From NCBI GenBank assembly GCA_977030845.1, contig OZ365114.1:17546001-17610000 (forward strand): 64,000 nt of DNA, in the 5' to 3' direction. Below the pieces are notes generated by a model. That model saw only the letters and a program-made list of their open reading frames with translations, had not been told where the DNA came from and made no database searches. Position numbers and translations under genes: made by a program. This DNA comes from Fimbriosthenelais zetlandica. Lineage: Eukaryota. Positions within the stretch are counted from its first letter, which is position 1; each line of letters starts with the position of its first letter. This document shows, piece after piece, positions 25,731-33,441 of the stretch.

Positions 25731-26815
25731 AGTGTGGCATGATCGCGAAGTGATTTTGAAATAGGCCGCCATGTTTGTTGTGGTTAGGGGATCCCATCAT
25801 CTTGTCCGGCCAATTGGGCAATAACTCCACCTTTACTGCCAATTATCTTAAGTTTAGTGCCTATCGGTGACAGTGAAATCACAATATGGTTTATAGTATG
25901 GCCAAAACTAATCGACTCGCTTGTTTTGATGTGAGAAAATGCCCTTTTCTGTCCTGGGAAGGCATGATACTTTGCAAAGATGGAGCCGCCATTTTGTTTG
26001 GGGGTGTTGTAAATTTCAATGGAAAATTTCTTGGAAATGGAAATTTTTTTCCCCTATCCAACCACCAAAGACATGTTAGAGTACAACATAGGTGCATGCT
26101 ATTTATAGATTTTGGGCAAAATACATTTTTAAAATACACAATTTTAGATACCATTGGTCACCTCGGCAAATGACCCCGTCTATCCAATCAGGGCCGTCAA
26201 AATCCCGTCAAAATCAAAATCAGCCAATCAACGGGCTTCCCCCTCAATTCAACAGCTCCAGCTGGAGGGTTTTTCAATAAGTTTTGTAATAATATAACAC
26301 CACCTGTGGACATATAAAACTGTTTATTTATCATCCAATGATCGATAATAAACGTTCTACGTTCTATTATATACGCCACACATATTCTATCTGACGATGT
26401 TTGATAGAACCTAAACGTCAATTCGATAGGTCACCCGTTGTTATTATTAGGGGGGCTATGCCTAGGCCTATAATAATTATAAGGTAGGCCTACGTTAGAT
26501 TGTCTAATTCATTATCATTACCTTTATAGGTTACCAGTAGGCTTATACTATGTAGGCTAGATCGGGATAATTAAAGTAACAAAATAATTGATAAATTTGT
26601 CTTTGAACAATAATTAATGTTTATTGACAAATAACTAAGATTCATTGAAGGATTAACTAGACGTATTAATTTTGTTAAAGTACAAGAAAGAAAACATTAC
26701 ATTTTACATTACATTTTACATTTCTCATCTTCGTTTCAAAGCTTGTGTTTCATGGCTATTAGAATATTCTGAGGAACAACTGTGGGATGGGGCTCACTCT
26801 GGAGGTGACACATGA

Positions 26816-28299
26816 TTAAACTAATAAGAAAATTGATAGCATGATTAGAAGAAAGGCATTAATGGATGCCTGATAAATGTAACTGACAGATTTTGACGGT
26901 TCATTGCTTGTAATGTTTGTGCTGTTTGTAAAGTTATCAGAGGGCAGCGTGTCATTCATGCCATTGTTGTCAAACATGAAAGGGTTGTCCTGTTTTCTGA
27001 ACTGAAGGTTGATTTTGTAGTTATCAGAAAGAATGGTCGTGTCTCTTCGGACAAAAGTGATCAAGAGCTGATAGAGAGCTTCTTCTTTTCCTTCTTCGAT
27101 TTTGCAGATGTCGGAAGACTGCGAGACAGAACTTCCATTCAGAGGAACAATATGCTGGAAGAAACAATGTGAAAAATAGCATCCGTGTAATTACATCGAG
27201 TTTGAAGGAATATGTGGCAGTTAAATGTAAACAATGATAAGGTGATATGATGTAAAAGCCTAGTCCATTGATAGCAATCATTTTGTTATTTTTAGGTAAA
27301 TCTGTTTGTAAAGTACCTGTGTACTGAGCTTTATATCCCCTCCTGGAAGCTGGAGGATTCGGGCAGTGCTGGCCATCTCTTCAGCATCCCTTTTATTTCT
27401 ACCCTTTTCTCCTTCTTTCTCCTTCTCTAACTTTTCATCGTTCGATGAACTGCTAGAATTTGCTGATGAATTAAGAACCATCGTGGAATTCAGTATGGAC
27501 ATTCCAAACGAGACAGAGTAGCCATTTGCGTTACAACCATCCTCATTCCTATTGCAATAGGTCCAGTTGGATATGAAAAGTTCATATGTCACATCCCCAA
27601 CTGATAGGTTGCCACGTTGTTCTTGAAGTATTGCAACTTTGCACTGGAATAAAAGACAGCCAGACATTGATCAGTGCACTACTTACACTCAAGCATAGGA
27701 ATCGATTTAAAAATAGAAAAGTAACTTACTTCTAACATTGCTCCAGCACTGGAAACAGGGGTTGATAGTTGAATCACGGTGCATGCTGTCCCAGAACATT
27801 TCTCTTCAGTAACATTGGAGAGCACAAAGTTCTGCTTAGTTAATTTAGCCAGGCCATGAGTAGGTTCCCTCATCTCCCCCATCACTTCCCTGTCCATGTC
27901 CAGCTCATAGACATAATTCAAACTGAGACTTATAGGATGGTCAAAGACACCTTCAATATCCACTTTGCCAGACTTTCCTATGACCGTCACCTGATTGAAG
28001 ATAGGACAATTTGATGCGAAAACGGTGAAAACAAACTTTTAAAGGGAGTATTCTCTATGTATACTGTTTAGCAGCAACTACTCTCTACTCGTTTATACTT
28101 GGAGTGGGATTCAAGGTGATTAATTCTTGTCGTATTAACTGTTACTGTTTAACTCTCAAAAATGAGATCAAACTTCAAACTAATAATTGAGGGAAATACT
28201 GACCGTTGTTGTCTGGACTGTTGCAGAACTCTGATCCTCTGCTGCTTCCTTCAGATGCAGGGACACCAGAAACCAAAGAATGTTTAGAAGAATCATCAT
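26816..28299 (-). CDS. Secreted, probably GPI-anchored ~340 aa protein resembling coral SAARP/CARP4 (acidic skeletal organic matrix protein family)
   Basis: Exons 28299-28204, 27990-27730, 27643-27317 and 27154-26816, all phase 0 and GT-AG. Signal peptide MMILLNILWFLVSLHLKEAA; motifs VIGKSGK, HGLAKLTKQNFVLSNV, IQLSTPV, YELFISNWTYC-x6-C; many N-x-S/T sequons; hydrophobic C-terminus NAFLLIMLSIFLLV*. The gene model is firm; the family assignment is from remembered motifs. Confidence 0.8.
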
Positions 28300-29400
28300 A
28301 AACTTTTATCGCTTCCTAAAGGCTTAATTGTGAGCCTCAGAATACAGCAATGAATGTATAGATTCCAATGAAGGTATAGATTGTAATTTTATTTGTTTTC
28401 CTATGTTTGACGTCATCGATGTATGTGCCCAACACGACAGGTGTAGGCATATATGATGAAGTCATCTCGAGTGATGTTCAGGTGTGCCAAGTACTGGCGT
28501 TGTTCGAACGGCAATTTCACGATTCCAATTGCAATTTTTTCTCAGTGAAGGCTCTTTTCTGTCTTTCATCTCCTTTTCGTCTTAATTGAATATAATTGAA
28601 AAATTTAAAGATAAGGTCAGACCTCATTAAACTAGTTTAATGTGATCCTGGGTGTCCCTAATCACGTCAAAAGTCGGCGCCGATCACTTGACGTCATTTT
28701 AACGTTCATTGGTCCGATTATCTGAACAGATTTTTAATTTGCTCTTGATTGCCTGTGATCGCCTATGATCGGAAATGACTCGAACATGACCATTTCTGTT
28801 GATCTCAACGCCACACATAATATGGATTCTGCACTTTGTTTATTTGGTTTTCATACACAATGGGGGAAATGTTATGATGCTGTATAAATTTCATACTTAG
28901 AATATACATGTCCAGAGCTTAACGACAAAATTTCTATCATCTTTAGTAAAGTATTGTGCTACATAGATACTTTATTACTATTTTACTCTAATATTATTGA
29001 CTAATAATTATCATTATTAAATATCACTAATTAAACTAATAATAAAAGTTTGTGTTACATAATTCCAATATGTCGGGGCATCATTCTGTCCTCAAAGGAG
29101 AAATTCCGAGGTCATCCGAAATCCTGTTCAGGCAAAAGGTGAACTTGATGGGGCGTATCGGAGCTAAAAAAAATGGCGACGCATTTATATGTTAGCATTA
29201 CAATGATAAACAATCCAAGAAAACCCCCATGAGCTGTCCCTCTTAGTCATGTTAAAAGCATTGGTTATAGTATTTTTGAAGGGCAAACTAGGGACACGCC
29301 GGTTCATGGTCTGATTCAGTTATTTGAACGTCCATCCATTTATGGTAACTCCAACTTTTTGGAGCCATCATTTTCCTTCTTGAAGAGCCAATTAATGTAT

Positions 29401-30994
29401 TCAGTCACGAGTTGAAGGGAAGGTGAGGACATTCCGTATTATACTCCTGGCTGGACCAGGGCCGCTACTGTCAGTAAAAATGGCTCCTCGAGCTCGGCCC
29501 TCATCGAATCTGTCATGCCTCACAACACAATCAATGACCCCAACAGTGATCGGTTCTGTCTGATCGCGATAATATGTTTCCGTGTTGTACTGAATGACAC
29601 AAGCACCAGCCTCGTTCGTCCCAAGGATATCTTTCTTGACGACTGAGCCAGTACAGGTATCAGTACATAAGTCATCATTAGGACGAAAGATGTAATGACC
29701 CCAGAGAACAATTGAACCTGCTGGGATAGTACCAGTGAAAGCACCAGTGGCTTCGTAATCTTCCCCAAAAAAGATCCACCAACCAACATCAGTAATTGGC
29801 GTGTTGTATAGTTGGGCCTGGCAGAAGACATTCTTGGCTACACTGGCTGTGTAAACTCTGTAGCGAGTGCCTGTGACATAAATGGCACGAAGAACAACAC
29901 CTCCTGGTTCAGTGCCAGGTAAAACGTGTGGGCCACCAAGCAACTCTGGATCAGACAGATGGGTGAAGTCTATCCCATATTGAAAAACAAAATTGTCCAA
30001 GGCTTGACGGCCCAGATCAATTACTTTATCCGAATCAAAACCGGCTTCCTCATACATCTGCAGGAAGATTGTTGGATCAGTGAGAAAATTTGCAGGCCCG
30101 TCAGCAATGAATGTGAGGGTCCGTTCATAGCAAGGGACATCTTCATCCTGACAGGGATAACACTTGCTAGCTTCAGCCTTTAAGCTAAAGTCAAATAATA
30201 CCAGCAGGAATCTGAAATTCAAAAGGAGGAATTAGTTATTTACAGTCAGTATATCCAGTCTAATAGATAAAAGAGAGGTATTCTTGAGGGAGACAATATG
30301 TTATGGCGATCTCTTCATTATGCATTATGGCGCGCCGTTATATTTGTTCATCAATGTACATACTTATGCCTACCATCATGCGTGTATAATACGCATGTCC
30401 TGCTTCCGTTTAGACTGCCTCACCTCAATGGATCTCAAGCACCAACTTTAGCACTCGTTGGTTGTAATGTAGAGTTTACTGTGACCTCTTTAATAATACC
30501 ATGAGAGATATAATGCACTACTTAATCAGTTACCACATTTTAATTGCTCTGTTCATTGCTGTATCTAGTCTATCTAATTGATATGAAGAGACAATTAATA
30601 AGAGGGAGATCGCGTGGAGCAAAGGGATACACCGAGAGCTACTTAACCATACTTTATCAACTCCTAAAACCATAGACCTATGCCTAAAACATAACATTTG
30701 GAGCATAAAAGTAAATACTTCACTGCCATAATTCAATGGTTGAGTGAGTATACAAAACATTGCCATACCTTCACCCTATAGTTTAAGAAACTCTAAACAC
30801 CTTTCCAAAAGGAATTCCATTATAATTCTATTTCAGGTTAATACATACACGGGCATCTTCGTAGCCTTATATATTTGAGCGCCAAATAAAACTCTAAAAT
30901 CCAGGCTTATATCAATAAAAGGCCTTCCGAAGCAAAAATATAATAACGCACATAATAATGAGAGTCTTAATACTTACAATATCAAATCTTTCAT
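29401..30994 (-). CDS. Uncharacterised secreted protein, 275 aa (intact copy A)
   Basis: Exon 1 is 30994-30978 (ATG AAA GAT TTG ATA TT|gtaagt); exon 2 is 30211-29401 after a tttcag acceptor. Protein MKDLILFLLVLFDFSLKAEASKCYPCQD...QYGIDF...YRVYTAS...DVGWWIF...WGHYIF...IIRNVLTFPSTRD*. Signal peptide present; the mature domain lies in one exon. Confidence 0.9.
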
Positions 30995-32075: not shown

Positions 32076-33441
32076 TCAGTCACGAATAGAAGGGAAGGTG
32101 AGGACGCTGTGTATTATAGTCCTTGCTGGACCAGGGCCGCTACTGTCAGTAAAGACAGTTCCTCGAGCTCGTCCCTCCTTGAATCTGTCATGCCTCACAA
32201 CACAATCAATGACCCCAACAGTGACCGGTTCTGTCTGTTCGCGTTAATAGGTTTCCGTGTTGTACTGAATGACTACAGCACCAGCCTCGTTTGTCCCAAG
32301 GATGTCTTTCTTGACGACTGAGCCAGTACAGGTATCAGTACATAAGTCATCATTAGGACGAAAGATGTAATGACCCCAGAGAACAATTGAACCTGCTGGG
32401 ATAGTACCAGTGAAAGCACCAGTGGCTTCGTAATCTTCCCCAAAAAAGATCCACCAACCAACATCAGTAATTGGCGTGTTGTACAGTTGGGCCTGGCAGA
32501 AGGCGTTCTTGGCTACACTGGCTGTGTAAACTCTGTAGCGAGCATCTGTGACATAAAGGGCACGAAGAACAACACCTTCTGGTTCAGTACCAGGTAAAAT
32601 GTGTGGGCCACCAAGCAACTCTGGATCAGACAGATGGGTGAAGTCTATTCCATACTGAAAAACAAAATTGTCCAAGGCTTGACGGCCCAGATCAATTACT
32701 TTAGCCGAATCAAATCCAGCCGCCTCTTCATACATCTGCAGGAAGATTGTTGGATCAGTGACTAAATTTGCAAATCCATCATCAATGAACGTGAGGGTCC
32801 GTTCATAGAAGGGGAAATCTTCATCCTGACAGGGATAACACTTGCTAGCTTCAGCATAAAGCTAAAGTCAAGCAGTGCCAGCAGGAATTAAGTAATTACG
32901 CCCAGTTTATTAACCATACTTCCAGACTGCTTGGGTCGTAGGGTGTCAAGGTTGACTGTTTAATGGAGGGAACACTCTTCCTCAAGTAATAAATGCATGG
33001 GATATTTGACCGAAAGATATTTTCAATTTTGGCTAATAAAAGGACATTGGTGTATTATGGGGACCCTTTTATCCATGCAGTATTAAAATAATAGTGATTA
33101 TAAAAGAGAAGTATTCAGTGAATCATATATGCATGGATCTTGTAGGCCTACTCATATCTTACTTGAGGCAATCTATTCATAATACGTTCTGGTGCGTCGT
33201 TATGTTCATTGTTTTCATTACACTATTACACCTTCGAAAAGTAATGCCATATTACAATTCGATTCCAGGTTAATACATAACCGGGCGTTATGTTCAATTA
33301 GAAGAAGGCCTAGGCTATATATTTTGAACGCCCGATAAAACTCTAAAATCTAGGCCTATATTAATAAAAGGCCTTCCAAAGCAATAGTATAATAACCCAA
33401 ATAATAATGAGTCTTAATACTTACAATATCAATTCCTTCAT
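32076..33441 (-). pseudogene. Pseudogene copy B of the secreted protein
   Basis: Exon 1 (33441-33425, MKELI) is intact. The exon-2 acceptor AG is lost near 32888, a 1-bp deletion falls in the signal-peptide codons (about 32855-32865), and a premature TAA (TAT to TAA) lies at 32246-32244. The ancestral stop is at 32078-32076. Confidence 0.88.

What the first reader, a model, noticed from the sequence alone, without database searches (positions are those of the whole stretch)
26816..28299. Coral skeletal-matrix (SAARP/CARP4)-like scaffold with no Asp tracts, in an apparent non-coral invertebrate
Seen: a 340 aa protein split over four short exons, so the ORF track shows only fragments. It has a signal peptide, a GKSGK motif, H-x8-F-x-LS-x-V, LST, ISNWTYC-x6-C and a hydrophobic GPI-like C-terminus. 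From memory of Acropora SAARP1/2 and acidic SOMP: (G)RSGKI..., HSVESFEDRPFSLSSV, VNLSTKL, FNIKISNWDFC...C, then a low-complexity insert, GGDSEMLL and a C-terminal anchor. The motif order is the same here, but the poly-Asp inserts are absent; a Ser/Asn-rich, then Lys/Glu-rich segment (NSSANSSSSSNDEKLEKEKEGEKGRNKR) sits at the second insert position. Inference: an ancestral non-acidic member of the family, and a candidate endoskeleton matrix or cell-surface glycoprotein.
Basis: partly seen in the sequence, partly recalled or inferred. Interest (0 to 1): 0.72.

Follow-up and report, generated by a model that had tools for sequence, protein, structure and literature searches.

The report
Divergent worm relative of coral skeleton protein
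This is an intact four-exon gene for a secreted, sugar-coated, membrane-tethered protein whose front half probably shares ancestry with the non-acidic core of coral skeleton proteins (SAARP/CARP4). Such non-acidic relatives outside corals were published in 2016, so it is a modest addition, not a discovery.

Summary
On the minus strand, four exons (28299-28204, 27990-27730, 27643-27317, 27154-26816) join through GT-AG introns, all in phase 0, into a 340-aa protein. It has an N-terminal hydrophobic leader, 11 N-glycosylation sequons, an RNKR site and a hydrophobic C-terminal end. It has no acidic tracts.

Standard searches find nothing: Pfam, an exhaustive phmmer of exon 2 against 1.84 billion proteins, the ESM Atlas and PDB. 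A crude profile that I hand-built from the published alignments aligns residues 35-169 collinearly:
- Score 46.6 bits, against shuffles of 15.3 +/- 2.1.
- Score 33.9 bits with the 18-sequence S21 core alone, p about 2e-6.
- The alignment runs in register across the exon 2/3 junction.
Support without that motif is moderate, p about 1e-2 to 1e-4.

The C-terminal half shows no similarity, so the "GGD" correspondence fails.

No RNA data, orthologue or paralogue was found. "Ancestral" and "skeletal matrix" are unsupported. Non-acidic homologues in Nematostella, Hydra and bivalves are already published, so this is a new member of a known kind. Homology is probable, about 0.65.

The parts
28204..28299 (-). 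Exon 1 (residues 1-32): ATG at 28299 and a hydrophobic leader at residues 1-16, a candidate signal peptide.
   Evidence: A stop lies 2 codons upstream of the ATG. The donor is GTCAGT at 28203.
27730..27990 (-). Exon 2 (residues 33-119): first strands of the conserved core. It holds GKSGK (27978-27964) and the H...F.LS.V block (27858-27811).
   Evidence: The N block scores 13.5 bits and the B block 7.0 bits; each is the best gapless hit at its expected place. AF2 of this piece alone predicts four strands but with pLDDT 42.
27317..27643 (-). Exon 3 (residues 120-228): the rest of the core through ISNWTYC-x6-C (27574-27533) and the G block, then the low-complexity insert (27493-27362) with RNKR (27400-27389).
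   Evidence: The W+c block scores 27.1 bits against 0.2 for the next-best position. This open frame is the best of 2935 frames scored.
26816..27154 (-). Exon 4 (residues 229-340 plus stop): a region of unknown fold, then an Asn/Ser/Thr-rich stalk with 4 sequons (26971-26864), then the terminal hydrophobic 15-mer (26863-26819).
   Evidence: There is a strong acceptor (polypyrimidine tract then CAG) at 27155. No similarity to the coral C-terminal region. Single copy in the genome.
27494..27984 (-). Coding span of the SAARP/CARP4-like core (residues 35-169), interrupted by intron 2 (27729-27644).
   Evidence: Hand-built profile alignment: 46.6 bits against shuffles of 15.3 +/- 2.1 and a reversed-sequence score of 15.9. 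The S21-only core gives 33.9 bits.
26620..26625 (-). AATAAA, a candidate polyadenylation signal 190 nt after the stop codon.
   Evidence: This is a sequence match only.

Best explanation
This is a real, single-copy gene of a probable annelid genome.

Shown directly:
- The gene structure and the encoded protein features.
- Collinear similarity of residues 35-169 to the published family alignment.
- The absence of acidic tracts.

Inferred:
- The product is a cell-surface or secreted glycoprotein. It would enter the secretory pathway through an N-terminal leader, be heavily N-glycosylated, and be held on the outer membrane leaflet by a C-terminal GPI-type or tail anchor.
- Residues 35-169 are a fast-evolved, non-acidic relative of the conserved beta-sandwich core of coral SAARP/CARP4/acidic SOMP. 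That core is already known in non-acidic form from sea anemones, Hydra and bivalves.
- The two loops where corals carry Asp-rich tracts are a 5-residue turn here and a Ser/Asn plus Lys/Glu-rich linker with an RNKR site. A furin-type convertase could cut at that site and release the N-terminal module.
- Without Asp tracts the protein is not expected to bind calcium or nucleate carbonate the way CARP4 does. A matrix or cell-surface adhesion or recognition role is more likely.
For: Gene model: canonical GT-AG, all introns phase 0, 340 aa. Leader, terminal hydrophobic 15-mer, 11 sequons and RNKR.

Profile built from column residue sets of S21 Fig (18 sequences) and S19 Fig (3 sequences) of PMC4890752, without using the window protein:
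- Core only: 33.9 bits against shuffles of 14.0 +/- 2.1, maximum 26.2 of 4000, Gumbel p about 2e-6. Window-preserving shuffles give the same result.
- With the N-terminal blocks: 46.6 bits over residues 35-169 with three small indels and one 9-column deletion; p about 4e-9.
- Five of eight blocks (N, B, D2, W+c, G) have their single best gapless hit at collinear positions. The B-to-D2 spacing of 51 is exactly the family's.
- The exon-3 frame is the top scorer of 2935 genomic open frames.
- The alignment crosses the exon 2/3 junction in register.

Other family features that are matched:
- The Cys-x6-Cys spacing.
- The low-complexity insert begins right after the core, where coral acidic region 2 begins.
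- Coral SAARP2 and SAARP3 also end in a hydrophobic anchor.

Non-acidic homologues in a lophotrochozoan group, the bivalves, are published.
Against: No standard method sees the relationship:
- Pfam on each exon gives only noise.
- Exhaustive phmmer of exon 2 against 1.84e9 representatives gave one junk repeat hit.
- The word-indexed search of the exon-3 frame, the ESM Atlas on three exons, and PDB all gave nothing.

The profile has weaknesses:
- It was hand-made, from OCR text, by someone who had already seen the candidate.
- One linker (N to L) was set to the candidate's length.
Without that motif the upstream blocks give only p about 0.014, and exon 2 is no longer among the top six of 2935 genomic frames once the N block is dropped.
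- The L+A, C and D1 blocks do not place best at their expected positions in gapless scoring.

Four of ten invariant family positions are lost: the E of GxE, the G of GT, and the K and F of KFN. The C-terminal half shows no similarity.

No canonical family member was found in this genome with a degenerate motif pattern or a 40-aa oyster probe. There is no expression evidence and no orthologue.
Confidence: 0.65

Rival explanations
1. A lineage-restricted orphan secreted or anchored glycoprotein. On this reading the resemblance to the SAARP core is a chance or convergent match of a beta-rich, Cys-loop-bearing sequence, picked out because of one striking short motif.
For: All database searches are blank. 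Evidence independent of the W-x-Y-C-x6-C motif is only moderate. The C-terminal half is unrelated. No canonical family member was detected in the same genome.
Against: Five blocks land collinearly with family spacing, including an exact 51-residue B-to-D2 distance. The total profile score is far outside both shuffles and 2935 genomic frames. The same overall architecture is present: leader, core, low-complexity insert immediately after the core, and terminal anchor.
Confidence: 0.22
2. The gene model is wrong or the locus is not expressed. The four frames might not be spliced as proposed (for example exon 3 ending at its in-frame stop 12 codons after the donor, or exon 4 belonging to something else), or this could be a recent pseudogene.
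For: No RNA or DNA run could be listed. The exon 3 donor, CAG|GTACTT, is only moderate. The exon 3/4 and 1/2 junctions have no homology support. Open frames of about 120 codons occur by chance a few times in 64 kb of 40% GC DNA (my estimate).
Against: All junctions are canonical and phase-compatible. The leader and the terminal anchor appear only in the spliced product. There are no frameshifts or internal stops. The family alignment runs through junction 2/3. An AATAAA lies 190 nt downstream of the stop.
Confidence: 0.08
3. One reading: a skeletal or endoskeletal matrix protein acting in biomineralisation.
For: Only the family resemblance and the fact that coral members are abundant skeleton proteins.
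Against: The feature held responsible for mineral interaction, the Asp-rich regions, is absent. Published non-acidic homologues occur in non-calcifying animals. Other agents' notes call this genome an annelid, and nothing here points to a skeleton.
Confidence: 0.05

Closest known systems
Non-acidic homologues of the SAARP/CARP4 conserved region in Nematostella, Hydra, Crassostrea gigas and Pinctada fucata (Takeuchi et al. 2016, PMC4890752, S21 Fig; clades NS1-NS3 of Conci et al. 2019)
   Same: Both are secreted proteins with the same core blocks: H...F.[LF]S, the strand pattern A.L.V.V.I..E..G, W.[FY]C-x6-C, and G..[LI].[FLIV]. Neither has Asp-rich regions. A lophotrochozoan group, the bivalves, is already represented.
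   Different: The window protein is much more divergent. It has a 9-residue deletion in the GxE...V..GT.KFN hairpin and has lost four invariant residues. A 40-aa oyster probe does not detect it. No annelid member is reported in the papers I could search.
Coral SAARP1/CARP4, SAARP2/CARP5 and acidic SOMP/SAARP3 (UniProt B3EWY6, B3EWY8, B3EWY7; M1SN56, M1RYM2)
   Same: The order of parts matches: leader, a G.SGK[IV] strand, insert site 1, the core, insert site 2, then a C-terminal hydrophobic anchor (as in SAARP2 and SAARP3). The core is reported as a 5+7-strand beta-sandwich (bioRxiv 10.64898/2026.03.24.713908).
   Different: The window protein has no Asp-rich tracts: D is 5.8% against about 20% in the coral proteins. 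Insert 1 is reduced to 5 residues. Insert 2 is Ser/Asn plus Lys/Glu-rich with RNKR. The C-terminal non-acidic region (CP.IY.MGGDSEM...) is not recognisable. There is no evidence of skeletal occlusion.
Pfam PF10287 YJL171C/Tos1 C-terminal domain (fungal GPI-anchored cell-wall glucanase-like beta-sandwich)
   Same: Exon 2 gives a weak match (E 0.094, 12.8 bits). Both are beta-rich, surface-anchored proteins.
   Different: The match is far below the curated cut-off of 27 bits, and exon 3 gives no continuation. I treat it as noise or at most a hint about fold class.

Membership tests
SAARP/CARP4 conserved-core superfamily (acidic and non-acidic members) | Significant sequence match to the roughly 120-aa non-acidic core of S21 Fig, PMC4890752 | tested here: inconclusive
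   The hand-built profile gives 33.9 bits (p about 2e-6 against shuffles), or 46.6 bits with the N-terminal blocks. No standard HMM could be run, because the spliced protein has no reference. Pfam and phmmer on single exons are blank.
SAARP/CARP4 conserved-core superfamily | W-x-[FY]-C followed by a second Cys after 6-8 residues, preceded by [IV]-x-x | tested here: met
   ISNWTYC-NRNEDG-C at residues 143-156. This block scores 27.1 bits against 0.2 for the next-best position.
SAARP/CARP4 conserved-core superfamily | Invariant G-x-E ... V-x-x-G-[TS]-x-K-F-N hairpin before the Trp | tested here: not met
   There is a 9-column deletion. The E is replaced by V, and either the G-T or the K-F-N is missing, depending on where the gap is placed.
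SAARP/CARP4 conserved-core superfamily | Secreted: an N-terminal signal peptide | tested here: met
   A hydrophobic 15-mer at residues 1-16 with Kyte-Doolittle mean above 2. The cleavage site was not predicted, since no SignalP was available.
SAARP/CARP4 conserved-core superfamily | Beta-sandwich fold of the core (5+7 strands, per bioRxiv 10.64898/2026.03.24.713908) | tested here: inconclusive
   AF2 on exon 2 alone gives four strands at pLDDT 42. Folding the two halves as separate chains gave no verdict, with pLDDT about 30. The whole domain could not be folded.
Coral SAARP/CARP proper (acidic skeletal proteins) | Two Asp-rich regions, with overall Asp about 10-20% | tested here: not met
   Asp is 5.8%, Glu is 8.1%, and the longest acidic run is 2 residues.
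Coral SAARP/CARP proper | Conserved C-terminal non-acidic region (C-P-x-[IV]-Y-x-M-G-G-[DN]-S-E-M ... D-P-S-V) | tested here: not met
   A profile from the 3 Acropora sequences against residues 206-322 scores 10.2 bits, against a shuffle mean of 12.0; 82% of shuffles score at least as high.
Coral SAARP/CARP proper | C-terminal hydrophobic anchor (SAARP2, SAARP3) | tested here: met
   Residues 326-340 are hydrophobic and end the protein.
Coral SAARP/CARP proper | Occluded in a mineral skeleton, or expressed in calcifying cells | not testable with these tools
   No proteome or RNA data could be reached.

The most novel reading that the evidence does not exclude
The SAARP/CARP4 core is an old eumetazoan cell-surface beta-sandwich module that annelids also keep, as a single, very fast-evolving, anchored copy. 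On this reading its two surface loops are long-standing 'free' insertion sites, which corals filled with Asp tracts and this lineage filled with a glycosylated, convertase-cleavable linker. That would make this gene a handle on the pre-biomineralisation function of the module in a non-calcifying bilaterian.
Probability: 0.4. Interest if true: 0.4.

Novelty: new member of a known kind. Interest (0 to 1): 0.25.

Why it matters
If the homology holds, it extends the non-acidic branch of the main coral skeleton-protein family to annelids. It also shows how far that module can drift: this copy is invisible to Pfam and to phmmer. That is useful for tracing how corals recruited an older surface protein for calcification. 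It does not change the published picture, in which the acidic tracts are coral additions to an older conserved core.

Tried and rejected
Searches that came back blank or as noise:
- Pfam on the four exon peptides: only noise.
- Exhaustive phmmer of exon 2 against 1.84e9 representatives: one repeat artefact, P0001.
- ESM Atlas feature search on exons 2, 3 and 4: no usable hit.
- Word-indexed search of the exon-3 frame at E <= 10: nothing.
- Metagenome contig scan with exon 2: nothing.
- PDB sequence search on three pieces: noise.

Paralogue searches in the own genome:
- Exons 2, 3 and 4 each find only themselves.
- A degenerate F-N-[IV]-x-[IV]-x-x-W-x-F-C DNA pattern gave two chance hits in short frames.
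- A 40-aa oyster probe copied from S21 gave one chance hit.
- The profile scan of 200 kb of flanking samples found no paralogue.

RNA evidence: none was listed, so read laying could not be used.

Structure:
- AF2 on exon 2 alone gave pLDDT 42, too poor for a fold search.
- Folding exon 2 and the core part of exon 3 as two chains gave no verdict. This is evidence neither for nor against.

Left out: any search, fold or HMM scan with the whole spliced 340-aa protein, and any HMM built from the published family sequences. A compact table of column residue sets was used instead.

Full report
THE OBSERVATION

The exons are 28299-28204, 27990-27730, 27643-27317 and 27154-26816, and they give 340 codons plus a stop. 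The three introns (213, 86 and 162 nt) all start with GT and end with AG after a pyrimidine tract, and all lie between codons. Each exon's frame closes just outside the exon. A stop lies two codons upstream of the ATG.

The product has these features:
- A hydrophobic N-terminus.
- Six cysteines and eleven N-x-[ST] sequons.
- One R-x-K-R site, RNKR, at residues 201-204.
- An Asn/Ser/Thr-rich stalk.
- A hydrophobic 15-mer that ends the protein.
- 5.8% Asp, with no acidic run longer than two residues.

An AATAAA lies 190 nt after the stop. No RNA or DNA run could be listed for this stretch, so splicing is not confirmed by reads.

- FGRSGKIMIV in SAARP2.
- HSVESF.DRPFSLSSV, VNLSTKL and KFNIKISNWDFC......C in SAARP1.
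- MGGDSEMLL, followed by a hydrophobic C-terminus.

The memory was accurate. The same paper says the conserved sequence between the acidic regions also occurs in Nematostella, Hydra, Crassostrea and Pinctada, and that none of those proteins has the acidic region. Conci et al. 2019 and Wang et al. 2021 repeat and extend this. A 2026 preprint predicts the CARP4/SAARP1 core to be a 5+7-strand beta-sandwich.

STANDARD SEARCHES

The spliced protein has no reference, so remote tools could only be given single exons. The results were:
- Pfam gave only sub-threshold noise: Tos1_C at E 0.094 on exon 2.
- An exhaustive phmmer of exon 2 against 1.84 billion representatives returned one repeat artefact.
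- The Atlas feature search was blank for exons 2, 3 and 4.
- The word-indexed search of the exon-3 frame was blank at E <= 10.
- A metagenome scan was blank.
- PDB gave noise.
- In its own 447-Mb genome each exon finds only itself.

The gene is therefore single-copy, and no orthologue above roughly 35-40% identity is on record for exon 2.

A DIRECT TEST AGAINST THE PUBLISHED ALIGNMENT

I transcribed the S21 alignment (18 sequences) into per-column residue sets. The window protein was not used in building them. I turned the sets into log-odds scores with BLOSUM62 pseudocounts and aligned the result to the spliced protein by local affine-gap dynamic programming.

The core profile scored 33.9 bits over residues 100-169. 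For comparison:

| Comparison | Score |
|---|---|
| Whole-sequence shuffles | 14.0 +/- 2.1 (maximum 26.2 of 4000) |
| Window-preserving shuffles | about the same |
| Reversed sequence | 15.9 |

The Gumbel-extrapolated p is about 2e-6.

I then added blocks from S19 for the strand before coral acidic insert 1 and for the segment after it. The alignment then runs from residue 35 to 169 with three single-residue or two-residue indels and one 9-column deletion. It scores 46.6 bits against shuffles of 15.3 +/- 2.1. The D block spans the exon 2/3 junction in register, which is the only independent support for any splice junction.

Among 2935 open frames of at least 40 aa from the window and 200 kb of flanking samples, the exon-3 frame is the top scorer at 29.8. 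The best unrelated frame scores 26.0 and is low-complexity.

HOW FAR TO TRUST THAT TEST

The profile is crude. It comes from OCR text, and I built it after seeing the candidate. Tests without that motif give weaker results:
- Blocks B, C and D alone against the upstream residues give p about 0.014.
- The N-terminal blocks give 2 of 4000 shuffles, but one linker there was set to the candidate's own length.
- When the N block is dropped, exon 2 falls outside the six best-scoring of the 2935 genomic frames.

In a parameter-free gapless scan, five of eight blocks (N, B, D2, W+c, G) have their best hit at collinear positions 35, 76, 127, 141 and 160. The B-to-D2 distance equals the family's 51 columns exactly. 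Three blocks (L+A, C, D1) do not place best at their expected positions. I estimate the motif-independent support at about 1e-2 to 1e-4.

Four of ten invariant family positions are lost, and a conserved hairpin is shortened by nine residues.

The C-terminal half (residues 206-322) scores below the shuffle mean against the three Acropora sequences.

A degenerate DNA pattern for the family's KFNI..W.FC motif and a 40-aa oyster probe found no canonical member in this genome.

STRUCTURE

AF2 on exon 2 alone predicts four strands that coincide with blocks N, L, B and C, but at pLDDT 42. Folding the two halves of the core as separate chains gave no verdict. No fold search was justified.

INTERPRETATION

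The most likely reading, at about 0.65, is a real gene for a secreted, glycosylated, C-terminally anchored surface protein. Its N-terminal 135 residues would be a strongly diverged, non-acidic member of the SAARP/CARP4 core family.

The positions of the two coral acidic inserts correspond here to:
- A 5-residue turn (residues 47-51).
- A Ser/Asn then Lys/Glu-rich linker that starts right after the core and carries RNKR.

Cleavage at RNKR by a furin-type convertase, releasing the N-terminal module, is an inference. So is the GPI-type anchor. Without Asp tracts a calcium or carbonate role is not expected.

The copy is derived, not 'ancestral'. Nothing supports a skeletal role. Other agents' notes call this genome an annelid; I did not verify that.

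The main rival, at about 0.22, is an orphan surface glycoprotein with a chance resemblance. A wrong gene model is less likely, at about 0.08.

NOVELTY

Non-acidic relatives outside corals, including in lophotrochozoan bivalves, have been in print since 2016. I found no paper reporting an annelid member. This is at best a new, unusually divergent member of a known kind, so interest is low to moderate.

The decisive steps are a proper HMM or HHpred test, a full-length structure comparison, and transcript data.

Noticed in passing
window 28408-28415 and 28689-28696 (also 2134, 5801, 23457, 58567): The CRE palindrome TGACGTCA occurs 6 times in the window against 0.41 expected; 0 of 100 shuffles reach 6. 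Two copies lie 109 and 390 nt upstream of this gene's ATG, so they may be CREB/ATF-type promoter elements.
   Followed up: partly
window 20935-22751: A 35-bp satellite of about 53 copies at 93% match. The long ORFs listed there (up to 580 aa) are repeat artefacts.
   Followed up: partly
window 24091-24161 (-): A tRNA gene (Rfam RF00005, 40.1 bits) lies 2.6 kb downstream of this gene.
   Followed up: no
window 29401-30222 (-) and 32244-32735 (-): Two closely similar open frames encode a Cys-containing secreted-looking protein and appear to be tandem duplicates. They are unrelated to the finding by tblastn.
   Followed up: no
window 27730-27990 (-), exon 2: Exon 2 gives a weak Pfam match to YJL171C/Tos1 C-terminal domain (E 0.094). 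Tos1 is a GPI-anchored fungal wall protein that, from my own memory and not checked here, has a GH16/ConA-like beta-sandwich. Since the coral core is reported as a 5+7-strand sandwich, the fold class might be shared, but this was not tested.
   Followed up: no
window 22889-23354: A GC-rich, Pro/Ser/Arg-coding tandem repeat region with periods of about 20-60 bp lies next to the satellite. It is open on both strands.
   Followed up: no
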